Positions 3,785 through 64,000 of a stretch of 64,000 bases of DNA are shown piece by piece. The position numbers and the translations under genes are program-made. The stretch is taken from positions 124,001-188,000 of IMG/VR virus record IMGVR_UViG_3300020474_000001; one strand, 5' to 3'. The notes below the pieces were generated by a model. It was given only the letters and a program-made list of their open reading frames with translations. It made no database searches and was not told the origin of the DNA. Positions within the stretch are counted from its first letter, which is position 1. Every line of letters begins with the position of its first letter.

Positions 3785-4728
3785 TTGAATTCACACTCCA
3801 CCATAATTTCAGTTAAACAAGCAAGCATATTTATTTCTTGATCCGCCACGAACGCCATCTGATACTGATACTTAGCAATAATAAGGACAGCAGAAGGAAT
3901 GCTATTCGGAACCAAGGAAATATTAAGAGCATCGTAAATACGACGCAAAAGTAAATTAGTATCATTGTCCAGGTTATTGACAACCCACTTACGGCACTCA
4001 CCGTAATCCTTGTTTTTAAGTTTCTTAACCAGTTCATCTGCATTTACATCACTGAACGTTGCAAGAATTCCCGTATCAATCTTACCAGAAGAAGAGTATC
4101 GTTGACATTCGTTGAGGACTCTTCTCCAGTCGGGGAAGTGCTTGTTGATGAGTTCATAGATGACTTTTGTGTCATATTCGACTCGCTCTGCATTAAGTAT
4201 TTCTTGAATTCGTTTGGAGAAGGACACAGCGATTGCTGGTTTTTGTTTTCCGCCAATTCCGAATTCAACCACAGCGCAACGGGAATGAAGTGGTTCGATG
4301 ATTTTGTTTTTGAAGTTGCAGGTGAGGATGAACCTGCAGTTGCCAGAAAACTCCTCTGTAAACGCCCTAAGTAAGAGTTGTACGTCGTTTGTTGTGTTAT
4401 CCGCCTCATCGATGATGATGACTTTGTGTCGAGCATCTGACGAAAGCGATACAGTGGAAGCGAAATTTTTTGCAGTATTTCTGACCGTATCAAGGAAGCG
4501 TCCCTCATCGGATCCGTTAATGACATAATAATCTGCTCCTAATTCATGACATAGTGCTTTTGCTACTGTTGTTTTTCCACATCCAGCAGGTCCAGAAAGG
4601 AGAAGATTTGGTACTTCTCCTTTACTTAAGAATCCCCGAAAGGTTTTTTTGATATCCTCTGGAAGGATGCATTCTTCAATTGTTTTGGGACGATACTTCT
4701 CGACCCAAAGAAACTCATCACGACTCAT
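3781..4728 (-). CDS. g44: Clamp loader large subunit gp44
   Basis: FLWVEKYRP, Walker A GPAGCGKTT, IIIDEAD, SRC motif. Confidence 0.97.
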   Translation of the reverse strand: MSRDEFLWVEKYRPKTIEECILPEDIKKTFRGFLSKGEVPNLLLSGPAGCGKTTVAKALCHELGADYYVINGSDEGRFLDTVRNTAKNFASTVSLSSDARHKVIIIDEADNTTNDVQLLLRAFTEEFSGNCRFILTCNFKNKIIEPLHSRCAVVEFGIGGKQKPAIAVSFSKRIQEILNAERVEYDTKVIYELINKHFPDWRRVLNECQRYSSSGKIDTGILATFSDVNADELVKKLKNKDYGECRKWVVNNLDNDTNLLLRRIYDALNISLVPNSIPSAVLIIAKYQYQMAFVADQEINMLACLTEIMVECEFK

Positions 4729-4735
4729 AATTTAG

Positions 4736-5209
4736 TTACTCACCAATGTTGTGGATTACTGGTTTCTCATGAGCCAGTATATCATAAAGTTCGGAGTTTT
4801 GCCCAGAGGAGACCTCCGAGAACTCTTTTTCTGGATCAAACTCATCATCACGAATTGCTTGATTGATAACTATTGATCCATCCTCTCCTGAGACACTCCT
4901 ATGAAATGTTTGGGGAGGAATGATCAATGCACCACTCTGACGATTCAAGTGAACAATATGATATGGAAACTTCCAACTCAAATTTACAAGTTCAAATGTG
5001 CGAGTCCCAGATAAAACTCGATTGTGATCAGTTTGGTGATAATGAATATAAAATTGCTTTGCCCCAACAATATCATCTGGAGGAGAAATAGCAGGTCCCG
5101 TATGAACCACTAGATCAGACGCATTGGAATCTTCTACTGAAATATCATAGAAGATTACAGATTCAGTTTCTCGAAAGACACGATGTTTTTTAAATTGAAC
5201 GAAACTCAT
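4736..5209 (-). CDS. Cupin-fold (RmlC-like) hypothetical protein
   Basis: HYHQTDHNRVLSG and IPPQTFHRS resemble the two cupin metal-binding motifs. Confidence 0.6.
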   Translation of the reverse strand: MSFVQFKKHRVFRETESVIFYDISVEDSNASDLVVHTGPAISPPDDIVGAKQFYIHYHQTDHNRVLSGTRTFELVNLSWKFPYHIVHLNRQSGALIIPPQTFHRSVSGEDGSIVINQAIRDDEFDPEKEFSEVSSGQNSELYDILAHEKPVIHNIGE

Positions 5210-5751: not shown

Positions 5752-5999
5752 AAGATGGTTGAGTCTCCAAATGAATCAACTGATCCACTCTCTCTTGAGT
5801 ATACAACTGCAAGAGTGATCCAGCAAACAAGCCAAATGAAATTAAACATTAAATTCTGCTTCCACATGAATTTACGGAACGATACAAACTCCGGTTTCTG
5901 AATAGTAACTTCGAGGATTAGTGATAAAACAAATCCAAAAATAAGCGGAATAAAAAGTATATCTGAGAAACTCAGAAGAAACAATAAAAATTCTTTCAT
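5736..5999 (-). CDS. Hypothetical membrane protein
   Basis: Two hydrophobic stretches; overlapping operon arrangement. Confidence 0.6.
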   Translation of the reverse strand: MKEFLLFLLSFSDILFIPLIFGFVLSLILEVTIQKPEFVSFRKFMWKQNLMFNFIWLVCWITLAVVYSRESGSVDSFGDSTILWRNP

Positions 6000-55298: not shown

Positions 55299-57230
55299 TT
55301 ATACTCTACTTGGACGAACTAAAGAATATGAACCGTAGCTTGATGATACGATATAGTTTGATGCTGATGGATCTAATCCAGATGATATATTATCAATGAT
55401 AGTTTCAAATATACTATTACTAGTATCTAGTTGCAAATAAAGATCTTGCAAACCAATTACGTCGTTTGAGCTTGGGCACAGTGACATTTCAATTATAGAT
55501 TGCCCATTCTTTAACATAGCTCCTGTTATATTGATCGGATTGAGAATAATAATTCCATTACCATAATTTATGGTACCAACATTCCTTTTTACAATTGTTG
55601 GTGTCAAAGAATTCTCTGATGGTAGTGTGAACAAAAATAGAGATCCTGTCTCTAAGTCAGCATTTGGTAAATCACTTAGGTATACATCTGAGTTTATACC
55701 ATCAACTTTAAATGCTGTTGTTTTAAGATTATACCCATCAGTAGATTTTATATGAAAACTATTTCCAAATCCAATAGCATACTCTGCAAAACTATTTAAA
55801 ACTGGTCTTAAATCTCTTCTAATAGAAATTGATGTAATATTAGATGTAATACCTTGATGACTATCGTCGATAATCTTTAGGAATTTACTATACTTAAATC
55901 TAGATCCATAACGATTCAATTCAGATGAATTTGCATACTTACTTGCATTATTTTGAACAATAGTAGATACATCTAAATCAGTTACTTGATTTGAGTTATA
56001 ATAAATTTTTGAATCAACTTCAATGTAGAGATATTTGAGGTCAAGTATCTCAGGAACAATTCCTGTGACAGCATATTTCTTTAACCTAAGCTTAATTTCT
56101 TGCTTTGCTAAGTTTGATAGGAAATCTCCAGTTTTTGGTTTAATGCTGATAAACACCTTTCCATATTGTGGAGGAACTAACTCTTCTCCACCAAATACAG
56201 ATATTGACTCAGTTTCTGGGTATATTTTACTTGGTATTAATACCTCATAATCTTGTGCAGTAACAGCTCTATTTTGTGTGCCGTATATTCTTGGCGCATA
56301 CTTTCGAATTGACTCTACAGATTCGATAGATGTTCCACCATATGATGGGGAAATAGTTGATATTGCAGATATGCCTTGTGTAGCATTATATTCTGCACCA
56401 TTTCGTATATAATACAAACTACCAGTAAATGCAAATCCACTTATACCATTTGCAGCTTCTCCATGAGATGTGATATACTCTGCGGTAATATAGTTACTAT
56501 CATCTAATTTATCACCAAAAATTCCATCACCAAAGAAGATTTCATATCTCTCATCTGATGACTCTTGAATATAAAAAACCTTTGAGTTATTTTGTAAGTT
56601 TAGAATATCAGTATATAGATTATATGTTGTTGAAGTAGTTGATTGCTCACTATTCTTTACAGATACATTGATTAAATCAGTATCGATACCGACATTTGGT
56701 AATAGAAATTTCTGCCTTGGATTTCTTGTAGAAAATGTAAAAGAAGAACTTAAGAAAGTTCCTTCATATATTTTTATGCTATCAAATAATGCAATACCGT
56801 TTACGACAGGAACAGTGATATCATTTAATATTGAATACACATAAGATTGATTTCCAATACCAGCACTGGATATTGCAACAGGTCCTTTTCTTAAGGTGAT
56901 CGTTGAAGGTGCAGGTACAATATTAGTTGCATCAACATTAAAACTTATATTTGCAGATGAAGCTTTTCTTGACTTTGGCAGATATCCAATATTCTTTGCC
57001 AATGATACTACATTCTCTCTTAATGTTGCACTATCAATAAAAACTTCATTTGTTACCATATTTGCATTATACGATGTGATATACGTATTGTATGCAAGTA
57101 AATTAATGATAGTCGATAAGTTTGAACCTTCAAAATCATAATCCGTAAAGTCCGAATTTGATTTTAAATAATCTTTTAATAATTCCTTAATTTGTTCAAA
57201 ATCTAAACTTGTAAAATTGATAAGTGACAT
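55299..57230 (-). CDS. g6: Baseplate wedge subunit gp6
   Basis: LDFEQIK, DYDFEGSNL, LRENVVSLAKNIGY, QNRAVTAQDY, PQYGKVFISIKP. Confidence 0.95.
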   Translation of the reverse strand: MSLINFTSLDFEQIKELLKDYLKSNSDFTDYDFEGSNLSTIINLLAYNTYITSYNANMVTNEVFIDSATLRENVVSLAKNIGYLPKSRKASSANISFNVDATNIVPAPSTITLRKGPVAISSAGIGNQSYVYSILNDITVPVVNGIALFDSIKIYEGTFLSSSFTFSTRNPRQKFLLPNVGIDTDLINVSVKNSEQSTTSTTYNLYTDILNLQNNSKVFYIQESSDERYEIFFGDGIFGDKLDDSNYITAEYITSHGEAANGISGFAFTGSLYYIRNGAEYNATQGISAISTISPSYGGTSIESVESIRKYAPRIYGTQNRAVTAQDYEVLIPSKIYPETESISVFGGEELVPPQYGKVFISIKPKTGDFLSNLAKQEIKLRLKKYAVTGIVPEILDLKYLYIEVDSKIYYNSNQVTDLDVSTIVQNNASKYANSSELNRYGSRFKYSKFLKIIDDSHQGITSNITSISIRRDLRPVLNSFAEYAIGFGNSFHIKSTDGYNLKTTAFKVDGINSDVYLSDLPNADLETGSLFLFTLPSENSLTPTIVKRNVGTINYGNGIIILNPINITGAMLKNGQSIIEMSLCPSSNDVIGLQDLYLQLDTSNSIFETIIDNISSGLDPSASNYIVSSSYGSYSLVRPSRV

Positions 57231-57235
57231 CTTCT

Positions 57236-57643
57236 TTATCTAGTTGGCTGTAAAACAAATTCTAACTGCTGGATTTGTGAATTAATATCAATCCCAATGA
57301 TTTCATATACAATTGATACATTAAATTCACCATTGTCATAATCTGAACCTACATCAACTTCGATTAATTTCACTCTTGGTTCATAATTTATAATGGAATT
57401 CTCAATTTTATCTTTGAGGATGTTTGCACTAAAGGTATCTATGTTCTCAAACAATGATGCGGTAACATCCGTACCAAAATCATAGTCAAAAAATTTCTCA
57501 CCAAATTGGGTATACACAATATTCCGAACACTTCGGGCAATTGCAGTCTCATTCTTTACTGGAAATATATCATCAGTTAATGGGTTCTTCTTAAATGATA
57601 AACTAATATCCTTAAACCCCTTACTGACCCTTTCTAGTGGCAT
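57236..57643 (-). CDS. g25: Baseplate wedge subunit gp25
   Basis: FKDISLSF, AIARSVRNIV, NYEPRV. Confidence 0.93.
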   Translation of the reverse strand: MPLERVSKGFKDISLSFKKNPLTDDIFPVKNETAIARSVRNIVYTQFGEKFFDYDFGTDVTASLFENIDTFSANILKDKIENSIINYEPRVKLIEVDVGSDYDNGEFNVSIVYEIIGIDINSQIQQLEFVLQPTR

Positions 57644-57649
57644 TTAAAT

Positions 57650-57787
57650 TTATAAATCTTCTTTTTTATTTATTCCCTTTTTTTCAGATTTTTTCTGCTT
57701 CAAGTACTTATCACTACTTACTTCCGTAATTAGTGTCATTCCTGATTCAATAAAATTTTTGCTTTTGTCAACTGGTGAATTGCCCAT
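57650..57787 (-). CDS. 45-aa hypothetical protein (not in ORF track)
   Basis: Manual translation MGNSPVDKSKNFIESGMTLITEVSSDKYLKQKKSEKKGINKKEDL with GGAG RBS. Confidence 0.65.
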   Translation of the reverse strand: MGNSPVDKSKNFIESGMTLITEVSSDKYLKQKKSEKKGINKKEDL

Positions 57788-57892
57788 AATAGTCTCCGAG
57801 ATACTACTGTAAGAACTTTTGTATGGGGTTTCTATCCCGCTGCTCAGATGTATTTATCAAAGAGCTACGTCGCGCCGTATAAACCCCTATAT

Positions 57893-57927
57893 AAAAAAAT
57901 GAGAGCGCCCCATTGAGACACTCTCAT
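57893..57927 (-). terminator. Intrinsic terminator
   Basis: ATGAGAGTG/CGCTCTCAT stem plus T-run on the minus strand. Confidence 0.7.
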
Positions 57928-57933
57928 AAACAC

Positions 57934-58074
57934 TTAACCTTTCCCTTGTCCTCGATAACGCTTTCGAGCTTTGTTACGTGAACTGGCAGCATACTTTGTA
58001 TGTTTCCCAGCACCTTGTCTTGTGTTCTTGGGAGTTGGTACAATTAAATCGCCAGTCTTACTTCGCATTGCCAT
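57934..58074 (-). CDS. 46-aa highly basic hypothetical protein (not in ORF track)
   Basis: Manual translation MAMRSKTGDLIVPTPKNTRQGAGKHTKYAASSRNKARKRYRGQGKG with GAGG RBS. Confidence 0.7.
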   Translation of the reverse strand: MAMRSKTGDLIVPTPKNTRQGAGKHTKYAASSRNKARKRYRGQGKG

Positions 58075-58085
58075 AATTCTTTACC

Positions 58086-58865
58086 TCAAATAATACGAGT
58101 CTTTTCATGTCCGACACGAATGCGTGGATCACAGAGAATACTAAAACCAGCTTTCTTTGCATCTAAACAAAAACTGACATCCTCGCCACACATGTCCTGC
58201 ACTTCACCACTCTCAAATACTTGCATCTTAGGTGCAAACCATGGATATGGTAATCCCTTATCCTCAAATACTCCCTTCCGAATTAACATCCACCCAAATC
58301 CTGCATAATCTACAGTGAATGGTTCGGTACGACCACTTAGACTTGTTAATGTCTCGTGATTCATTACCCCACCGTTATCCTTGAATCCATTCTCATCCAT
58401 CCAATGTGCAACACTCGATGACTTGCCATCTTCTGTACAATACCATCCAGTCGTAATTGCATTCTTCTTTCCTTCCTCAGGTTCTGCTAATGCACATAAC
58501 TGCCAGAATTTCTCCGTGTTGAATACAATATCACTATCAATCCATAATTGATAATCATACTCTAACTTACCGTCCCATGGCTCTTGGTCGGGTCCCCTCA
58601 ATACATTGGCACCCAAACATTTGCAACGGGCGAAATTTACCATTGAACTGTAATCTTGACTAATCTGTATAGCCATTCCATTCTGTACTAAGTCAAAACA
58701 TAATTGCACAAAATTTTTGAGAAATGTATACGATACTCCCCTGCCTGGAAGGCAAAATACAATCGTCTTCCCTCTCATACTCTCTTTGATACTCTCGTAA
58801 TCCCACTCAGGCTCTGATACACTCACAGCAGCGGCATCCTCCTTGATACTGAATCCTTTAGACAT
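58086..58865 (-). CDS. GT-A fold glycosyltransferase-like protein
   Basis: DxD motif WIDSDIVF, AGFGWMLI, CGEDVSFC, RVGHEK. Confidence 0.7.
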   Translation of the reverse strand: MSKGFSIKEDAAAVSVSEPEWDYESIKESMRGKTIVFCLPGRGVSYTFLKNFVQLCFDLVQNGMAIQISQDYSSMVNFARCKCLGANVLRGPDQEPWDGKLEYDYQLWIDSDIVFNTEKFWQLCALAEPEEGKKNAITTGWYCTEDGKSSSVAHWMDENGFKDNGGVMNHETLTSLSGRTEPFTVDYAGFGWMLIRKGVFEDKGLPYPWFAPKMQVFESGEVQDMCGEDVSFCLDAKKAGFSILCDPRIRVGHEKTRII

Positions 58866-58888
58866 AATCTTTCAATGACTACTCCGTA

Positions 58889-58917
58889 ATTATAACAAAT
58901 TTATATATACCTGTCAA
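58889..58917 (-). promoter_or_regulatory. Consensus sigma70 promoter
   Basis: TTGACA-17nt-TATAAT on the minus strand upstream of the GT-like gene. Confidence 0.85.
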
Positions 58918-59111
58918 TATTGTTACCCTTGACCACCCTTTTATATCCCACGGATTTTTTTCTGAAACCTTATACAAAAACCCTTTTTGGGTGGCAAAAA
59001 TTTTTGGCGTTTTTTTATATACATCGCGTTTTGTCACCTCTGTAGGTTAGGGATGTTTGCTTTTTTTAATACGCGCAAATATAAACAATTAACAATAAAT
59101 CGTAATTACTG

Positions 59112-59239
59112 TGTATTACTAATAGATAGTGATTTGCTATGTATTACTAATAGATAGTGATTTGTTATTTGATAATTAGCAGATTACTATTTGATAATTA
59201 AGCGATTGCTATGTAATAAGAATAGATAGCAATCGCTTA
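59112..59239. repeat. AT-rich direct repeats and a perfect inverted repeat
   Basis: 25-bp TGTATTACTAATAGATAGTGATTTG at 59112 and 59140; TATTTGATAATTA twice; 14-bp IR 59199-59212 / 59226-59239. Confidence 0.9.
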
Positions 59240-59267
59240 TATATTACTATATTGTGGATAGTCAATA

Positions 59268-59510
59268 TTAATAGTCTGCCCATTCTGCTAGCATTTCATT
59301 CAATCGCGCAACGTCCAAATCAGCATGCTTCCAATACACACCATCAGGAGTAACTGCACCGTAAAGTTCAACTAATTGGTGCGAGAGTGACTTATAACCG
59401 TGCTCCGCAAACATACGAGCAAGGTTATACATTCCCTCATCATTACCCAACCAGAGAGCAACATTCCAGGTTTCGTAGTTTGCCCAACCGTTGCAAGTTT
59501 GAGTGCTCAT
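59268..59510 (-). CDS. Putative early hypothetical protein (NGWANYETW motif)
   Basis: CNGWANYETWNVALWLGNDEGMY...TPDGV motif typical of small phage early proteins. Confidence 0.8.
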   Translation of the reverse strand: MSTQTCNGWANYETWNVALWLGNDEGMYNLARMFAEHGYKSLSHQLVELYGAVTPDGVYWKHADLDVARLNEMLAEWADY

Positions 59511-59547
59511 AATTCAGGGGGAAGATGTAAAGAATGGGGAGCGTTGC

Positions 59548-59739
59548 CTAGTCAAGGAGAACAGCAGCGTGATCGTTAGCGAAGCGGCGAGCGTTACAGG
59601 CAGCGATCTGCCATGCGGGACGCCCTGCTGAGGGTTCAGGGAACGCTGCGGAAATGGCAGCATCGACGCCCTGGTGGATGGAGCGTTCAACCCATACGTG
59701 GGAACGATCAGAGAGGGAGCAAGCGGGAGAGAAGGGCAT
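59548..59739 (-). CDS. Small GC-rich putative early hypothetical protein
   Basis: ORF track; same strand and spacing as neighbours; pyrimidine-rich leader. Confidence 0.45.
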   Translation of the reverse strand: MPFSPACSLSDRSHVWVERSIHQGVDAAISAAFPEPSAGRPAWQIAACNARRFANDHAAVLLD

Positions 59740-59797
59740 TGGAAGAACGGGGGGAGAGATACATGGGGGCGACGATGCCCCCGCTGTGTTGTGGTGC

Positions 59798-60016
59798 TTA
59801 GGGGAACATCAAGTCGGTAAAGCGCTCGGAGTGCCATGCCCGCAACTCGCCTAGGTCGATTCGCTCGCCCATCAGGCGTCCGTAGTCGATGGCGAACTGC
59901 TGTAGAAGGCAAAGTTCAGGATTAACAGGGTCCCAGACATAGCGAACTGCCTCTGGAAAGGAGATGGTGCCATTGGCATCAGCGGTGGGCATTGGTTTCG
60001 TTTGAACTAAACCCAT
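59798..60016 (-). CDS. Small putative early hypothetical protein
   Basis: Preceded by the palindrome/leader cassette at 60017-60070. Confidence 0.55.
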   Translation of the reverse strand: MGLVQTKPMPTADANGTISFPEAVRYVWDPVNPELCLLQQFAIDYGRLMGERIDLGELRAWHSERFTDLMFP

Positions 60017-60132
60017 AATCGCCGAGATCTCAGGAGAAATCTATAGGCACTGTGCCAGTTTGCCAACTGGTTTTGACTGGTTTTGAAATGTTAAGAGTTG
60101 TGAAATATTCGCGATTCTGCCTCTCGGTGCGC

Positions 60133-60218
60133 TACACTATGGGAGACAACCAAAGGAGGGGTGAGGTAGCCCTGATGACGCCAACGGTCGCCACTCCCCC
60201 TGCAATCAATTAAGTATA
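60133..60218 (+). other. Repeated element copy 1 between convergent -10 boxes; contains 12-codon ORF 60175-60213 (MTPTVATPPAIN)
   Basis: TACACT(+) ... GAGGTAGCCCTGATGACG...CGCCACTCCCCCTGC ... TATACT(-). Confidence 0.7.
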
Positions 60219-60270
60219 TCATTTTGTTACAAAATCCCTGTCAATGGGTTGTGTGCCACTATGGCGGGTG

Positions 60271-61011
60271 TCACACCCCGGCATGCTGTTGCTTATATGG
60301 TTTCAAAAATGCGGCGTTAAGTTTTACTTTAGCGTTAAGATTCGACTCCTTTGACTGACCGCCGTGCAGCAACAGTGCAAAGGGACCATCCATGAAACAG
60401 CGTTCTTCGTGGCGGTACTCGACACCGTCAATTGGCAGATTCAGTTCTGCCGCTTCTGCAATATCCTGCACGACCTTTACATAGCGAGGGAACCTGCCAG
60501 CATCAATTAATGCATCATATCTGCCGCCATAAGATGCTGTCATATAGAAATTATCAGGCAAAATAACACTGCGGAACAAGTGCAACGACTTAGAGTAGCA
60601 ATAGAATTTAAGACCTGGCATTCTCTTGGCGACCTTAATCCATGCTTTTAAATACTCAATATTGAAAAAATCACCAGACTCATGTATACGAATGCGAGTA
60701 TACTTACGGCGGCGCTTCTTTAACTCTACCTGAATCGATTGATAGATTAACTCCTCAATATTGTCACTAGCATTAATTAAATCAAAATTATGCTTTCGTG
60801 CATCATAAACTGCAGGATATTGTGCTTCAGCACGGGCAGCGAAACAAGTGAATTCAGTGTTATCACCACGCACTAGATTGCGCTTGCCGCTGTTAACAAC
60901 TGCCCATGCCCTACACTTATCAGCACCGGGACAGGTTCTACCCGCAGGCAGGTTGAAAATCAAGGTGTCGGGGTGCAGTTTAGCGTTGCCAGCGGAGAAC
61001 TTAAGAAGCAT
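60271..61011 (-). CDS. GP88-like (radical-SAM-related, Cys-containing) phage protein
   Basis: FSAGNAKL, FNLPAGRTCPGADKC...CFAA, RIRIHESGDFF, FYCYSKS; start MLLK at 61011. Confidence 0.75.
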   Translation of the reverse strand: MLLKFSAGNAKLHPDTLIFNLPAGRTCPGADKCRAWAVVNSGKRNLVRGDNTEFTCFAARAEAQYPAVYDARKHNFDLINASDNIEELIYQSIQVELKKRRRKYTRIRIHESGDFFNIEYLKAWIKVAKRMPGLKFYCYSKSLHLFRSVILPDNFYMTASYGGRYDALIDAGRFPRYVKVVQDIAEAAELNLPIDGVEYRHEERCFMDGPFALLLHGGQSKESNLNAKVKLNAAFLKPYKQQHAGV

Positions 61012-61150
61012 GGATCTGAGGTCGATTGATACCAGTATTGCCGGGATTCGCATGCATGCTGGGGTCATTGTGCCACTATGCCAACTGGTTTGAAACGTTA
61101 CAAGATGTTAAAGGTTCGTGAATCTGCCGCACTTCCCCCATCCGATACGC

Positions 61151-61235
61151 TATGATGTGGGAACAACAGAAGGAGGGGCAGGGCAGCCCTGATGACGAAA
61201 AAAGGCGACACTCACCCTGCAACGAAATAATCATA
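61151..61235 (+). other. Repeated element copy 2; contains 12-codon ORF 61192-61230 (MTKKGDTHPATK)
   Basis: TATGAT(+) ... GGGCAGCCCTGATGACG...CGACACTCACCCTGC ... TATGAT(-). Confidence 0.7.
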
Positions 61236-61291
61236 AGATATGTGACACTTTATGAACTGTCACAGTGCCACTTTTATATGTGGTTTTATTA

Positions 61292-61358
61292 CATAATTGT
61301 ATTTTATGGCAGGGTAAGTGGCGATCGTTGTCGTCTTCGGTGCTACCTCACACCTCAA
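61292..61358 (-). other. Repeated element copy 4 (inverted; AAG in place of ATG, no in-register stop)
   Basis: Minus strand reads GAGGTGTGAGGTAGCACCGAAGACGACAACGATCGCCACTTACCCTGCCATAAAA. Confidence 0.65.
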
Positions 61359-61489
61359 TAAATTGTAACAATCAGAGCATAATGGTGTTTCCCAACTGAT
61401 CGTATCTTAGCACAGCAGGAGCAGATCCGTGACCCACTCCGTAACATAATGAAATATTATCACTTTGCCAGCATAGAGTTTGAGTGATA

Positions 61490-61714
61490 TTATTCTTCCT
61501 CCTCCTCTACTTTTACGACCTTGAGTTTACCTGCGGCAATAAGATCCAACAGCATACCAGTCGATCCCTTCAAAATACCGTCTCCGTCAATACGCAGACA
61601 CTGAAATTCTTTGGCAATGTCATCTACAATGTCCGGCGTTATTTCCCCACAACGGATGGCATATACTCGTCTTGTATGCTCGTCGTTGATGTCAAGACCC
61701 AAATAGTTTCTCAT
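61490..61714 (-). CDS. Putative early hypothetical protein
   Basis: ORF track; plausible composition; acidic tail. Confidence 0.6.
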   Translation of the reverse strand: MRNYLGLDINDEHTRRVYAIRCGEITPDIVDDIAKEFQCLRIDGDGILKGSTGMLLDLIAAGKLKVVKVEEEEE

Positions 61715-61765
61715 GATGATGAAGATGAAGATGATGTTAGCGAAGGTGATGATTGTGAAGGTGAT

Positions 61766-62002
61766 TCAATACTGTGGATCAATGAACATAACAGTGCAGG
61801 ATCCACGCGGACGAAGAATAATGGTTTCGCCACATTCTTCTCGGTCACATTTCACTCCAGATAATCCTATTGCTTCCTTACATGCTAGGACAATCTGTCG
61901 ATCAGTGGCACAATCTGAGAGACTAATTGTCTCCCGATCACACCAACTGTAGTTTGCTTCACCACCGAATGTGTCAGTGTACTCAACCTTAAAGTTCTGC
62001 AT
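61766..62002 (-). CDS. Putative early hypothetical protein (YTDTFGGEANYSW motif)
   Basis: VEYTDTFGGEANYSWC...AIGLSGVKC...LRPRGSCTVMFI. Confidence 0.8.
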   Translation of the reverse strand: MQNFKVEYTDTFGGEANYSWCDRETISLSDCATDRQIVLACKEAIGLSGVKCDREECGETIILRPRGSCTVMFIDPQY

Positions 62003-62040
62003 GATTCAAAAAAAGAATAAAGTTTGCGGGTAAAATCTTA

Positions 62041-62304
62041 TCAGGTGTGAGTGCTACCATCAGGTAACATGCAACCGTGAAGACCACAATTTGGCAAAAT
62101 ACCTTCGATGATGACACTGTAGGTGCCATTATGATGGTTTCCTTGCACATCTTCCTCCACCATTAACCCCTGCATAAGTTCAACAACACTCTTGCCTGTT
62201 TGTATGCTCCACATAGAAAACTTTGCGAGTTGCTGATAAGTCAGAACCTGGAAGTGATCACCCAGGGTTCCATCAGATTCGAGAAGTGGTGCTCTGTAAC
62301 GCAT
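62041..62304 (-). CDS. Putative early hypothetical protein
   Basis: ORF track; preceded by palindromic sites at 62340-62385. Confidence 0.65.
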   Translation of the reverse strand: MRYRAPLLESDGTLGDHFQVLTYQQLAKFSMWSIQTGKSVVELMQGLMVEEDVQGNHHNGTYSVIIEGILPNCGLHGCMLPDGSTHT

Positions 62305-62393
62305 TTGGTTGGTTGCGATTGATATAAGTATGGGTCAGAGTGGACAACTTATCAACCTCAGAGTGACAGTTTGCCAAGTGTCCACTAATGTTA

Positions 62394-62759
62394 TCAAGCG
62401 ATTGCCCTTTCTATCATTTTAATAATAAGTTCACTTGGCGCTACAATATCATTAACTACGCTTTCTTCCCCCGTTGCTTCTAAGGGAACACAAGTTAAGT
62501 GCATCTTCCAATCATATTTTCTATTGTTGAAGAACAACATAGAATAATCTACAGCATCGACAATATCAGCACCGATAACAGCAAGGGATTTTGTATTCTT
62601 TTCTTTGCTAACTTTCCATTCTTTGACAGGTTCCATACCTTCGCCGTCGAGAACATCAAACGCAACAAGATTCCAACCTGCATCATCAAGTTTGCGAATA
62701 ATCTTCCGGGCGTTGCTGCATGTCTTGGAGATTGCCATGGGGTTGATGTAACTGAACAT
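62394..62759 (-). CDS. Putative early hypothetical protein
   Basis: ORF track; preceded by the leader cassette and a palindrome at 62762-62819. Confidence 0.65.
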   Translation of the reverse strand: MFSYINPMAISKTCSNARKIIRKLDDAGWNLVAFDVLDGEGMEPVKEWKVSKEKNTKSLAVIGADIVDAVDYSMLFFNNRKYDWKMHLTCVPLEATGEESVVNDIVAPSELIIKMIERAIA

Positions 62760-62848
62760 ATAATCATCGAGATCTCAGGACCAATCAATACCAGCTGTGA
62801 CAGTTCACCAAGTGTCCACCGATGCCCTCAGAGGCACCTAGGAGGCGC

Positions 62849-62932
62849 TATAATATAAACAAATCAGAAGAGAGGTGGGGTAACCTCGATGACAACAAAT
62901 ATCGACACTACTCCTGCCATAAAATAATTATA
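62849..62932 (+). other. Repeated element copy 3; contains 12-codon ORF 62889-62927 (MTTNIDTTPAIK)
   Basis: TATAAT(+) ... GGGGTAACCTCGATGACA...CGACACTACTCCTGCC ... TATAAT(-). Confidence 0.7.
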
Positions 62933-62947
62933 TCAAAATGTAACAAT

Positions 62948-63136
62948 GTGCCAGTTTGCCAAGTGTCACAGTGCCAGTTCATAAACTGTCCACTCGGTCC
63001 TACTGCCTCCCTCCCGTGCTCCACCCTTCCACTGTAGGGGCTGCTGCCCGCTGCTGCTGTATAAACCACTACGATTTTATAAATTGTCACAAAGACACAT
63101 AAAGCACTGGCACTGGACAGTTCTCGAAGTGTCCAC
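62948..63136. promoter_or_regulatory. Cluster of palindromic operator-like sites
   Basis: GTGCCAGTT-tgcc-AAGTGTCAC (62948), GTGCCAGTT-cata-AACTGTCCAC (62971), TGGACAGTT-ctcg-AAGTGTCCAC (63114). Confidence 0.75.
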
Positions 63137-63179
63137 TGTGTGAAAATCGCGACCTTATGAATTTTTATGGCGGGGGTGC

Positions 63180-63208
63180 TTGACAAAACGGCGATCGTGT
63201 GATAACAT
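63180..63208 (+). promoter_or_regulatory. Sigma70-type promoter with no obvious downstream ORF
   Basis: TTGACA-17nt-TAACAT. Confidence 0.6.
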
Positions 63209-63240
63209 GCTGCCCAAGATCACAAGGTCTCAGAGGGTTT

Positions 63241-63280
63241 CATAAGACTTTACATAAGACTTTACATAAGACTTTACATA
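63241..63280. repeat. 12-bp tandem repeat CATAAGACTTTA x3 plus a partial unit
   Basis: Units at 63241, 63253, 63265, partial at 63277. Confidence 0.95.
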
Positions 63281-63720
63281 ACAATTCAAAATATAAACAC
63301 TACTTATATTAGATATAAGAAAAACAAATACATCATCCCTTAGCAGACAAATACATACATGTCAAGAGATAAGTTACAAAATTTAAGATAATTTTTGTTA
63401 CATATTATTTTCCACAATTCCACAGAGTTATTCCACAAGATGATGATTATGAAGATGATGATGATAATGAAGATGATATGTATGCCCGTGAAGATGATAC
63501 TCTAGATGCTTCGTAGATACTCTGTAGCACCTTCCTAGACACTACTGAGTGCATTTGAATAAAAAACGAAAGTATATTTATTTAACCATTTTTTATATGT
63601 TTTTGCACTATTTTGTAGGTAATAATGCTCAAATATATGACTGAAGATGACATTTAGTCTTTTCTCCATCACGGGACTGTCATAAATGCCCTGGTGGTCA
63701 TGCTGCTGCTGAAGATGACA

Positions 63721-63749
63721 TAAAAAAAGGAGAGTATTAACTACTCTCC
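63721..63749 (-). terminator. Intrinsic terminator after the His-rich gene
   Basis: GGAGAGTA-N5-TACTCTCC perfect stem plus T-run on the minus strand. Confidence 0.85.
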
Positions 63750-63767
63750 ATATATTATGCTTAATCA

Positions 63768-63998
63768 TCAATGAAAGTGAGTTTTTATTGTATAGTGATA
63801 AGATCTAATACCATGATGTTTGTGACCATCTCCGTGCTTATGTTTGTGCTTATGAGTAATACCTGATTTGAAATGAGTATGCCAATGATTGTGCTTAATT
63901 ACATGAACATGATAATGTTTATGATGTCCATGTCCATGATGTTTAGTATGAGCAAATGCTGGGGCAGTTGTAATCAGCAGACCAGCAGTGAGAAAGAG
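63768..63998 (-). CDS. Secreted histidine-rich peptide (5' end outside window)
   Basis: Manual translation ...LFLTAGLLITTAPAFA|HTKHHGHGHHKHYHVHVIKHNHWHTHFKSGITHKHKHKHGDGHKHHGIRSYHYTIKTHFH*; AxA signal-peptidase site. Confidence 0.8.
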   Translation of the reverse strand, partial: LFLTAGLLITTAPAFAHTKHHGHGHHKHYHVHVIKHNHWHTHFKSGITHKHKHKHGDGHKHHGIRSYHYTIKTHFH

Positions 63999-64000
63999 AA

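What the first reader, a model, noticed from the sequence alone, without database searches (positions are those of the whole stretch)
60133..62932. Triplicated cassette: convergent promoters bracketing a conserved ~55-bp core with a 12-codon ORF
Seen in sequence: three dispersed copies (60133-60218, 61151-61235, 62849-62932) share the core RGGYARCCYYGATGACR-N7-KCGMCACT-N3-CCTGC. Each starts with CGC plus a plus-strand -10 box (TACACT, TATGAT, TATAAT). Each ends with a minus-strand -10 box (TATACT, TATGAT, TATAAT); the outer span is 86, 85 and 84 bp. Each has an ATG 34-36 nt after the plus -10 box, a purine-rich SD-like stretch and a TAA at codon 13, giving MTPTVATPPAIN, MTKKGDTHPATK and MTTNIDTTPAIK (consensus MTxxx[AD]TxPA[IT][NK]). 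The plus-strand units oppose every neighbouring gene. Inference: each cassette would make a fully complementary sense/antisense RNA pair. Possible functions are (a) a micropeptide plus cis-antisense module (type I TA-like or a peptide signal), (b) a structured sRNA or leader switch timing early genes (the GG-rich 5' half can pair with the CC-rich 3' half), or (c) R-loop priming sites. Caveat: the TAA overlaps the opposite -10 box, so its conservation could be a by-product. I know of no described phage system with this layout.
Basis: partly seen in the sequence, partly recalled or inferred. Interest (0 to 1): 0.9.

Follow-up and report, generated by a model that had tools for sequence, protein, structure and literature searches.

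The report
Repeated cyanophage promoter-hairpin noncoding module
The repeats are real, but they are four copies of a widespread, unannotated cyanophage intergenic module (a promoter driving a short hairpin-bearing noncoding transcript that marks the borders of swappable gene cassettes), not genes for a 12-residue peptide.

Summary
The three copies exist as described and are far beyond chance (covariance-model E 1e-17). A fourth, inverted copy at 61290-61379 (minus strand) was missed. I found 141 distinct homologues in 128 loci, almost all uncultivated T4-like cyanophage contigs. Phage S-SRM01 and the metagenome-assembled DSL-LC03 also carry it. No cyanobacterial genome or Rfam family matched.

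Conserved features:
- a TAnnnT -10 box, often TG-extended;
- a 5-bp hairpin about 20 nt downstream, with strong compensatory covariation, a closing G-U pair and a G-rich hexaloop (RRGGUM);
- an A-rich linker of 16-21 nt;
- the tracts CGNCAC-N4-CCUGC and usually AAAUA.

The 12-codon ORF is not conserved. 77% of copies lack the ATG. Orthologues of copies 1 and 2 carry CTG or TAG there, and indels break the frame while the nucleotide motifs persist.

Most copies point opposite to both neighbouring genes. They sit about 30 nt from a palindromic box (TGTGNCA-N8-11-TGNCACA) shared with the neighbour's divergent promoter. In close relatives the genes between modules are swapped.

Best reading: an early-expressed small noncoding RNA unit inside a PeSL-like mobile regulatory cassette. 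Its function is unproven.

Novelty: the reader's claim stands as far as I could check. Rfam gave no match, and the cyanophage papers I could read do not describe the element.

The parts
60130..60222 (+). Element copy 1. -10 TACACT 60133-60138. Hairpin P1 60158-60162 / loop 60163-60168 / 60169-60173. CGCCAC 60189-60194. CCTGC 60199-60203. Incidental ORF 60175-60213.
   Evidence: CM R1 90 bits, E 3e-17; coordinates; sequence
61148..61239 (+). Element copy 2. -10 TATGAT 61151-61156. P1 GGGGC 61175-61179 / loop AGGGCA 61180-61185 / GCCCT 61186-61190. CGACAC 61206-61211. CCTGC 61216-61220. Incidental ORF from 61192.
   Evidence: CM 88.6 bits, E 6e-17
62846..62936 (+). Element copy 3. -10 TATAAT 62849-62854. 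P1 62872-62876 / loop 62877-62882 / 62883-62887. CGACAC 62903-62908. CCTGC 62913-62917. AAAATAAT tail.
   Evidence: CM 92.3 bits, E 9e-18
61290..61379 (-). It is inverted, co-oriented with the genes and convergent with copy 2. TACAAT 61362-61367. P1 61350-61354 / loop 61344-61349 / 61339-61343. CGCCAC 61318-61323. CCTGC 61309-61313. No ATG and no TAA.
   Evidence: CM 66.4 bits, E 7e-12; nhmmer E 1e-15; orthologues at L005 7016-7105(-) and L042 7982-8071(-)
60051..60074 (.). Box upstream of copy 1 (TGTGCCAGTTTGCCAACTGG, right half degenerate). The sense-gene -10 GATTAT (60015-60020, minus strand) lies 30 nt beyond it.
   Evidence: (D5, D8)
60252..60275 (.). Palindromic box TGTGCCA-N10-TGTCACA, downstream of copy 1
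   Evidence: 0 mismatches to the box pattern
61069..61091 (.). Box abutting the start of the GP88-family gene, upstream of copy 2
   Evidence: D5
61241..61286 (.). Perfect palindromic box TGTGACA-N10-TGTCACA (61241-61264) plus an overlapping second box-like repeat, lying between convergent copies 2 and 4
   Evidence: (D5, D19)
62796..62820 (.). Box 28 nt upstream of the copy 3 -10. The sense-gene -10 GATTAT (62760-62765, minus strand) lies 30 nt on its other side. It forms a direct repeat with the box at 62362-62386, and the two flank the p121 cassette.
   Evidence: (D8)
62362..62386 (.). Box at the 3' border of the p121 cassette. L005 has a single box at the joined site.
   Evidence: window 62385|62807 are joined in L005; window 62363-62386 is 100% identical to L042 9222-9245
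62947..62990 (.). Two overlapping boxes downstream of copy 3 (TGTGCCAGTTTGCCAAGTGTCACA, then GTGCCAGTTCATAAACTGTCCAC)
   Evidence: (D5, D19)

Best explanation
Each copy is a self-contained small noncoding transcription unit.

What the unit contains:
- A host-type (sigma-70/SigA-like) promoter of the -10 or extended -10 kind, with no -35 element.
- The start of an RNA whose first 75 nt or so are conserved across a large family of T4-like cyanophages.
- That RNA has a short GACAAYC leader, a 5-bp hairpin with a closing G-U pair and a G-rich hexaloop (RRGGUM), an A-rich linker, and single-stranded tracts CGNCAC-N4-CCUGC(C)-N3-4-AAAUA.

Where the unit sits:
- It usually lies between two tandem early-type ORFan genes, on the opposite strand.
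- Its promoter stands back-to-back with the next gene's promoter across a shared palindromic box.
- Its transcript runs toward the terminator of the preceding gene.

Shown: the family, the hairpin and its strand, the loss of the ORF, the placement, the coupling to the box, and the fact that these modules delimit gene cassettes that differ between close relatives.

Inferred: that the -10 box fires early, and that the RNA, not the DNA, is the functional product. I take it to be a multi-copy ('sibling') small RNA that acts through its conserved loop and C-rich tract on a factor in trans, either a host or phage mRNA or a protein. It keeps all its features in either orientation and next to unrelated genes. 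As a secondary DNA-level role, the ~90-250-bp repeated modules serve as homology patches for cassette shuffling, as PeSLs do in T4-type coliphages.
For: Family:
- 44 pattern hits included 11 distinct true homologues.
- An ATG-independent pattern returned 119 stretches, more than 100 of them true.
- In total 185 nhmmer hits in 128 loci, 141 unique copies; 125 CM hits.
- Isolate S-SRM01 and the MAG DSL-LC03 carry it in unannotated intergenic DNA next to gp25/gp6/gp7.

Hairpin:
- 98.5% of cells are paired in 121 distinct sequences. There are 150 compensatory cells against 37 in shuffles, and the covariation score is 0.78 against 0.22 (0/500 shuffles). Slid controls score 0.09 or less.
- The closing pair is G-U in 79 sequences and G-C in 37, which fits only the element strand.

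Promoter: a TAnnnT box at a fixed distance in nearly all copies.

Not coding.

Context independence: high-scoring copies are co-oriented with downstream genes in L033 and L028 and in window copy 4.

Placement:
- Both neighbours are on the opposite strand in 77 of 132 cases, and the downstream neighbour is convergent in 102 of 132.
- The box lies within 110 nt upstream in 107 of 138 copies against 9% of shuffles, and 78 of those sit about 30-34 nt from the -10.
- The sense-gene -10 mirrors it on the other side.

Shuffling: homology between the window and L005/L042 is confined to the modules. GP88, p74 and p121 are missing or replaced in the relatives.

Phage-specific: only 5 short MAG contigs matched in 185,579 genomes, and none was cyanobacterial.

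Not a known RNA family.
Against: - There is no expression data, so transcription from the -10 box is inferred.
- Most copies lack a canonical terminator on their own strand. Of 95 copies with a strong downstream hairpin, 56 have the T-run on the opposite strand and only 15 on the element strand. A discrete sRNA 3' end is therefore not evident.
- No complementary target was found in the other 60 kb of the window, and host genomes could not be searched for targets.
- The strong orientation bias is not required for a trans-acting RNA and hints at a cis role.
- Outside the hairpin, conservation has no covariation partner. Those tracts could be DNA-level protein sites. G[C/A/T]CAC also occurs in the box half-site.
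- Both discovery patterns fixed some motifs (CGNCAC, CCTGC, AAATA), so their apparent invariance is partly ascertainment.
Confidence: 0.5

Rival explanations
1. Cis-acting convergent (antisense) unit or insulator. The promoter fires back toward the preceding gene. This would stop polymerases that read through its terminator, or make an antisense RNA to that gene's 3' end and so speed early-mRNA decay. The conserved 5' domain would only stabilise the RNA or recruit an RNase.
For: - 102 of 132 copies converge on the gene downstream of them, at a median distance of 56-62 nt.
- A terminator hairpin for that gene lies a median of about 25 nt beyond the element, and most elements lack their own U-tract terminator.
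- In the window, copies 2 and 4 face each other 50 nt apart.
Against: - Interference or antisense action does not need about 75 nt of conserved sequence with an invariant loop and tracts.
- About 23% of copies are followed by a co-oriented gene yet are equally conserved.
- The same sequence sits next to unrelated genes.
Confidence: 0.2
2. Purely DNA-level mobile regulatory cassette (PeSL-like). The repeats persist because they carry promoters and operators and act as recombination joints. The hairpin would be a DNA or terminator feature, and the transcript itself would have no function.
For: - Modules coincide with the borders of swapped cassettes.
- They lie in the hyperplastic region beside the baseplate genes in the window, Sf-FP1, DSL-LC03 and S-SRM01.
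- GGGG..CCCC-type stems recall PeSLs.
Against: - G-U closing pairs in 65% of copies mean the hairpin forms well on one strand only.
- Homology patches need no conserved loop or fixed tracts across very divergent phages.
- The stem-loop lies downstream of the -10 and has no U-tract, so it is not a PeSL-type terminator.
Confidence: 0.12
3. Micropeptide gene (12 aa), with or without a cis-antisense RNA.
For: All three + strand window copies, and 14 of 120 family members, have an ATG two nt after the hairpin and a stop at codon 13, giving MTxx[VI][AD]TxPAxK-like peptides.
Against: - The ATG is absent in 77% of copies.
- Orthologues carry CTG, TAG, AAG or GAG at that position.
- There are frame-breaking indels.
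- Codon 6 varies at its second position (GCC/GAC/GUC) while positions 1 and 3 stay fixed.
- The stop codon coincides with the conserved AAAUAA motif.
- Twelve residues with no hydrophobic stretch do not resemble a type I toxin.
Confidence: 0.03
4. R-loop or primer site for replication initiation. This is the reader's option (c), analogous to the T4 origins that use a promoter-derived RNA.
For: A promoter is followed by a purine/G-rich initial transcript and an A/T-rich tail. From my own knowledge, T4 oriF and oriG use transcripts as primers.
Against: - There are up to four copies within 3 kb, in both orientations.
- The 3' half of the RNA is C-rich.
- A conserved hairpin loop and fixed tracts are not features of the T4 origins.
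- No direct test was possible.
Confidence: 0.03

Closest known systems
PeSLs (promoter-early stem-loop cassettes) of T4-type coliphages and vibriophages (Arbiol et al. 2010, PMC2839356; Comeau et al. 2014, PMC4122927)
   Same: - Short repeated intergenic cassettes concentrated in hyperplastic regions of T4-like genomes.
- They combine a host-type promoter with a G/C stem-loop and flank ORFans.
- Cassette content differs between close relatives exactly at these repeats.
   Different: - PeSLs are co-oriented with the genes, have full -35/-10 promoters with an AT-rich upstream element, and place the stem-loop upstream as a terminator.
- Here the unit mostly points the opposite way and has only a -10 box. 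The hairpin lies inside the transcript without a U-tract.
- A further ~45 nt of conserved sequence follows, and a palindromic box is attached.
- There is no sequence similarity, and minicircles were not tested.
Multi-copy ('sibling') cyanobacterial sRNAs such as Yfr1 and Yfr2-5 and the tandemly repeated NsiR1 (my own knowledge; Yfr1 and Yfr2, as far as I recall, are in Rfam)
   Same: - Each copy has its own promoter.
- The RNA has a 5' stem-loop followed by a conserved single-stranded C-rich tract.
- There are several paralogous copies per genome.
   Different: - No Rfam match.
- It is phage-borne only.
- Most copies lack their own terminator.
- No target is known.
- Expression is unproven.
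Lambda-type nut sites and HK022 put sites (promoter-proximal RNA signals; my own knowledge)
   Same: A promoter-proximal RNA with a short linear motif, a 5-bp hairpin whose stem covaries while the loop is conserved, and further linear motifs.
   Different: - Those elements sit upstream of the operons they antiterminate. Here 77% of copies face the 3' end of a convergent gene.
- No N-like or Q-like factor was identified.
- There is no sequence similarity.
Known cyanophage RNA elements: CfrI antisense RNA, PhotoRC-II, wcaG, manA, glnA/glutamine riboswitch, abiF (listed in PMC9964418)
   Same: Conserved noncoding RNA motifs carried by T4-like cyanophages.
   Different: None matches in Rfam scans of the window or of ten other loci. 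Those motifs are cis-regulatory leaders or gene-specific antisense RNAs, whereas this one has no fixed partner gene.

Membership tests
PeSL (T4-type mobile regulatory cassette) | Repeated cassette in hyperplastic regions, flanking ORFans | tested here: met
   It lies in the region beside gp25/gp6 and phrog_1574 in the window, DSL-LC03, S-SRM01 and 62 loci. There are 1-4 copies per locus.
PeSL (T4-type mobile regulatory cassette) | Strong sigma-70 consensus promoter (-35 and -10, AT-rich upstream element) co-oriented with the flanking genes | tested here: not met
   Only a -10 or extended -10 is conserved, and there is no -35 at 17 nt. The unit is on the opposite strand to both neighbours in 77 of 132 cases.
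PeSL (T4-type mobile regulatory cassette) | Stem-loop upstream of the promoter acting as a terminator | tested here: not met
   The hairpin lies about 20 nt downstream of the -10, inside the transcript, and has no U-tract.
PeSL (T4-type mobile regulatory cassette) | Recombination between copies creates indels, replacements and minicircles | tested here: inconclusive
   Homology blocks against L005 and L042 end at the modules, and the genes between them differ. This is consistent with the feature, but junctions inside the elements and minicircles were not shown.
Micropeptide / type I toxin-antitoxin | Conserved ORF (start, frame, stop) across homologues | tested here: not met
   There is no ATG in 92 of 120 copies, the spacing is variable, and a 1-nt deletion subfamily exists.
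Micropeptide / type I toxin-antitoxin | Small hydrophobic membrane-active peptide | tested here: not met
   The 12-mers are polar and proline-rich, for example MTKTVATPPAIK.
Any Rfam 15 family (riboswitches, Yfr1/2, hammerhead, ykkC-III and others) | Covariance-model match at or near the gathering score | tested here: not met
   Nothing overlaps any element at E <= 10 in window 57000-64000. In ten other loci the only match touching an element (L20_leader, L118 272-400) scores 25 bits against a gathering score of 58.7.
Riboswitch / cis-regulatory leader | Consistent co-oriented downstream gene under its control | tested here: not met
   The downstream neighbour is on the opposite strand in 102 of 132 cases, and neighbour identity is variable.
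Trans-acting bacterial/phage sRNA | Own promoter at a fixed distance from a conserved RNA body | tested here: met
   A TAnnnT box is conserved in register with the hairpin. This rests on sequence only.
Trans-acting bacterial/phage sRNA | Own intrinsic terminator defining a discrete 3' end | tested here: inconclusive
   95 of 139 copies have a strong hairpin within 110 nt, but only 15 have a U-run on the element strand, against 56 on the opposite strand.
Trans-acting bacterial/phage sRNA | Complementary target(s) | tested here: inconclusive
   No target was found elsewhere in the 64-kb window. Host genomes were not searchable for targets.
Trans-acting bacterial/phage sRNA | Detectable stable transcript | not testable with these tools
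   No transcriptome data were available.
nut/put-type antitermination signal | Located upstream of, and co-oriented with, the terminators and genes it controls, with a cognate factor | tested here: not met
   The orientation statistics do not fit, and no factor was identified.

The most novel reading that the evidence does not exclude
The element is a new class of phage-encoded regulatory or decoy RNA. It would be a multi-copy early RNA whose hairpin loop (RRGGUM) pairs with the downstream (N)CCU of CCUGC to form a small pseudoknot. That RNA would bind and titrate a host factor, such as a defence or RNA-processing protein, or block a set of host mRNAs. It would be expressed in lock-step with every early gene cassette through a shared palindromic operator. 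The operator plus the RNA unit would together form the mobile joint that lets cyanomyoviruses shuffle early genes.
Probability: 0.25. Interest if true: 0.8.

Novelty: new variant of a known kind. Interest (0 to 1): 0.6.

Why it matters
- T4-like cyanophages are among the most abundant viruses in oceans and lakes, and most of their early 'hyperplastic' DNA is unexplained.
- It has clean hairpin covariation, a conserved promoter, and a fixed partnership with a palindromic box. It is absent from Rfam and from the genome papers I could read.
- It gives a concrete handle on two open questions: how early transcription is organised in cyanomyoviruses, which lack T4's MotA/AsiA system, and how ORFan cassettes are exchanged.
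- One carrier, S-SRM01 on Synechococcus KCZYC6, is an isolated phage-host pair, so the predictions can be tested directly.
- It also shows how a convincing-looking mini-ORF can be a by-product of conserved nucleotides.

Tried and rejected
1. My first search patterns used the wrong spacing (N10 instead of N9) and found nothing, not even the window's own copies.
2. The pattern containing GATGAC made the ATG and the 12-codon ORF look conserved. This was ascertainment bias, exposed by CM hits in the same contigs and by an ATG-free pattern.
3. A Shine-Dalgarno/'split RBS' reading of GAGG was dropped. In many members those bases are part of a covarying stem (ACCGGC/GCCGGU, GGCAGC/GCUGCC).
4. The long-range GG/CC helix (the MFE fold of single copies) has no covariation. 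An inner GAC/GUC helix is not maintained either.
5. A mutual-information scan of all column pairs found only the P1 pairs.
6. An ORF on the opposite strand (ATGGCAGG...) has its ATG in 57 of 120 copies and lengths from 3 to more than 65 codons, so it is not conserved.
7. Hammerhead (CUGAUGA) and guanidine-III (ACGAGGUGCG) look-alikes were rejected. The motifs are not conserved and Rfam is silent.
8. tRNA or tmRNA: none.
9. A host origin was rejected, because no cyanobacterial genome was hit.
10. BLAST of three further variants against 50,697 phage records found only S-SRM01 and DSL-LC03.
11. The Syn9 transcriptome paper (Doron et al. 2016) is not held, so I could not check its promoter motifs.
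12. Pfam and PHROG scans of the neighbouring genes gave no function that would explain the element.


Full report
**Setting.** The window is part of IMG/VR contig UViG_3300020474_000001 (207,655 bp). It is a T4-like cyanomyovirus: gp6-like and gp25-like baseplate genes lie at 55.3-57.6 kb, and all sizeable genes in the region are on the minus strand. The finding lies in a stretch of higher G+C (0.43-0.45 against 0.30-0.36 elsewhere). That stretch holds small genes of unknown function: DUF7249, phrog_25802, a GP88/PF17338 protein, phrog_22729 and three ORFans. This is a typical hyperplastic region next to the baseplate block.

**The observation.** The three + strand copies are as described (family D2). 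The -10-like boxes, the ATGs, the TAA at codon 13 and the three 12-mers are all correct. A covariance model built from these copies and their homologues scores them 88-92 bits (E about 1e-17). This copy faces copy 2 across 50 nt and is co-oriented with the genes. It reads GAAGAC where the others have GATGAC, and TAC where they have TAA. No further copy exists in the 64 kb.

**Homologues.**
- A pattern taken from the core found true relatives in other viral contigs. Because that pattern contained GATGAC, it made the ORF look conserved.
- Two unbiased routes corrected this. CM hits within the same contigs showed the syntenic relatives L005 and L042 with the same four-copy layout.
- nhmmer finds 185 copies in 128 loci, 141 of them unique. 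cmsearch finds 125.
- Among 50,697 deposited phage genomes only two carry the element, both in unannotated intergenic DNA beside the baseplate genes. They are Synechococcus phage S-SRM01 (an isolate; PMC8557907) and DSL-LC03 (a lake MAG; PMC10611076).
- A scan of one genome per 185,579 prokaryotic species returned 25 hits, about the number I expected by chance from the pattern's information content. Five were true elements, all on short MAG contigs assigned to non-cyanobacterial groups, which are probably mis-binned phage DNA. None was in a cyanobacterium.

**What is conserved.**
1. A TAnnnT hexamer, often preceded by TG or CG.
2. About 6 nt later, GACAAYC.
3. A 5-bp (sometimes 6-bp) hairpin with loop RRGGUM.
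4. A linker, typically G-NN-GAC followed by A-rich sequence. The distance from the end of the loop to CGNCAC is 16-21 nt.
5. CGNCAC, four variable nt, then CCUGC(C).
6. After 3-4 nt, usually AAAUA(AU).

The hairpin is the only paired element. In 121 distinct sequences 98.5% of cells pair. There are 150 cells with compensatory double changes against 37 in shuffles, and the covariation score is 0.78 against 0.22 (0 of 500 shuffles reach it). Slid controls give 0.09 or less. The closing pair is G-U in 79 sequences and G-C in 37, and another pair is U-G in 10. On the complementary strand these would be C-A mismatches, so the hairpin belongs to the element's own strand. With the -10 box in fixed register, that strand is most simply an RNA.

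**The peptide model fails.**
- Of 120 anchored copies, 92 have no ATG after the hairpin. The hexamer at that site is GATGAC in 15, ACTGAA in 15, GTAGAC in 14, TATAAA in 8, GTTGAC in 7, GCTGAC in 6, and so on. Only 14 copies have a 12-codon ORF.
- Orthologues of window copies 1 and 2 read CTG or TAG at that position.
- A subfamily (L028, L015, L077) has a 1-nt deletion that shifts the frame yet keeps ACACUUACCCUGC and AAAUAAU.
- Where an ATG is present, the 'conserved' residues simply translate the conserved nucleotides. Codon 6 is G-N-C, giving Ala, Asp or Val, and AAAUAA gives Lys-stop.
- The opposite strand has no conserved ORF either.

**Other structures.** On the alignment, that helix is no better than shuffled columns: 78.8% against 78.0% paired, with no compensatory signal. 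Four of its pairs, loop RGGG with (N)CCU, are compatible with the hairpin. They would form a small pseudoknot and are formed in 80-93% of sequences, but both sides are nearly invariant, so this cannot be tested by covariation. Rfam 15 has no overlapping match in the window region. In ten other loci its only match touching an element is a 25-bit L20_leader hit, far below the gathering score.

**Placement.** The following figures come from a crude longest-ORF tiling.
- Both neighbours are on the opposite strand in 77 of 132 cases.
- The gene downstream of the element is convergent in 102 of 132, with a median gap of 56-62 nt.
- Between the element and that gene there is often a GC-rich hairpin. 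Ninety-five of 139 copies have one of -10 kcal/mol or better, starting about 25 nt past the element. The run of T lies on the gene's strand in 56 and on the element's strand in only 15. This hairpin is therefore the neighbour's terminator, and most elements lack a canonical terminator of their own.
- Upstream, 107 of 138 copies have a palindromic box TGTGNCA-N8-11-TGNCACA within 110 nt, against 9% of shuffles. In 78 of them it ends about 30-34 nt from the -10. The next gene's -10 (for example TGTATGAT, TATACT, or GATTAT in the window) lies about 30 nt on the other side.
- The usual intergenic layout, read along the gene strand, is therefore: terminator, inverted element, box, gene promoter. 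The element's promoter and the gene's promoter diverge.
- In the window the sense -10 GATTAT (60015-60020 and 62760-62765) overlaps the ATGs listed by the ORF finder. The real starts of those two genes are probably the next ATGs (59992 and 62738).
- The box also occurs without the element in P-HM2 and Sf-FP1, so the box is the more general motif.

**Cassette shuffling.** BLAST of the window against its syntenic relatives shows homology confined to the regulatory modules and some genes. The GP88 gene (60278-61061), p74 (61492-61715), and DUF7249 plus p72 (59250-60018) have no counterpart in L005. In L042 the homology runs on to about 59606 and so keeps DUF7249. The p121 cassette (62386-62806) is missing in L005, exactly between two direct box repeats (62362-62386 and 62796-62820). 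L042 differs again. This is the behaviour described for the PeSLs of T4-type coliphages (PMC2839356, PMC4122927). The anatomy differs, however, in orientation, in promoter type, in the position and role of the stem-loop, and in the extra conserved tracts. A study of S-PM2 reported no dense PeSLs in that cyanophage (PMC4503421).

**Interpretation.**
- Shown: a large phage-specific family; a strand-specific hairpin; a conserved -10 in register; no coding constraint; a stereotyped position coupled to a palindromic box; association with cassette borders.
- Inferred: that the unit is transcribed early by host polymerase and that the RNA is the functional product.
- I favour a multi-copy small RNA acting in trans through its loop and C-rich tract (confidence about 0.5 for 'functional noncoding RNA unit', and less for the trans mechanism). 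My reason is that the sequence is equally conserved in both orientations and beside unrelated genes.
- The main rival is a cis-acting convergent or antisense insulator. The orientation bias and the missing terminator favour it.
- A purely DNA-level cassette, the micropeptide and an R-loop primer rank lower.
- No target was found in the window, and no expression data exist. Both discovery patterns fixed some motifs, so their invariance is overstated.

**Novelty.** I found no Rfam family and no description in the papers I could read. The Syn9 transcriptome paper could not be read. I rate this a new variant of a known kind: a phage intergenic regulatory cassette or candidate sRNA.

Noticed in passing
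window 60252-60275, 61241-61264, 62947-62970 (perfect); 60051-60074, 61069-61091, 62362-62386, 62796-62820 (degenerate); also L002 (P-HM2) 4001-4026 and 4105-4128; L001 (Sf-FP1) about 4765-4790, 5003-5025, 5178-5200, 5836-5860: A palindromic box TGTGNCA-N8-11-TGNCACA lies in early intergenic regions of many cyanomyoviruses, with or without the element. It typically sits about 30 nt from two divergent -10 boxes. It looks like the operator of a dimeric DNA-binding protein, and I found no description of it.
   Followed up: partly
window 60014-60021 and 62757-62765 (minus strand): The conserved sense-strand motif CCTGAGATCTCG(R)(Y)GATTAT puts a -10-like GATTAT on top of the first ATG of ORFs 59798-60016 and 62394-62759. 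Their true starts are probably the next ATGs (59992, 62738), giving very short or absent leaders.
   Followed up: partly
window 58000-63200: This stretch has G+C 0.43-0.45 against 0.30-0.36 in the rest of the window. The hyperplastic region looks compositionally foreign. The phrog_1574 (glycosyltransferase-like) gene at 58086-58865 is a syntenic anchor, present in 62 of the element-bearing loci.
   Followed up: partly
window 59514-59797: A G+C-rich stretch of about 280 nt has no convincing ORF (only a TTG-started 132-aa frame of odd composition). Homology to L042 stops at about 59606.
   Followed up: no
window 59106-59245: Three copies of a ~35-nt repeat (TTGCTATGTATTACTAATAGATAGTGATTTG) are present, the last forming a long near-perfect hairpin (59191-59245, minus strand). 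That hairpin gave a spurious sub-threshold 'mir-4766' hit in Rfam.
   Followed up: no
window 63410-63437; L001 (Sf-FP1) 5941-5975: Three closely spaced TTCCACA repeats lie in a long noncoding stretch. A similar triple TTTTCCACA occurs at the corresponding place in Sf-FP1. These look like iterons or protein-binding repeats.
   Followed up: no
window 63241-63283 and 63441-63500: A tandem 12-nt repeat (AAGACTTTACAT, three copies) and a GATGAT/GAAGAT low-complexity run lie in the gene-poor 63.0-63.55 kb stretch.
   Followed up: no
L001 9890-10025 (Sf-FP1), L050 21945-22328 (DSL-LC03), L051 8700-8876 (S-SRM01): Small AbrB/MazE/SpoVT-type or other DNA-binding proteins are annotated in the same early regions. 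They are candidates for the box-binding factor.
   Followed up: no
L064, L065, L070, L076, L081 (about 5-40 nt after the element): One subfamily carries a 12-bp A/T-rich hairpin (ATTCTCAATAAG...CTTATTGAGAAT) directly after the element, followed by a box, in place of the GC-rich terminator hairpin.
   Followed up: no
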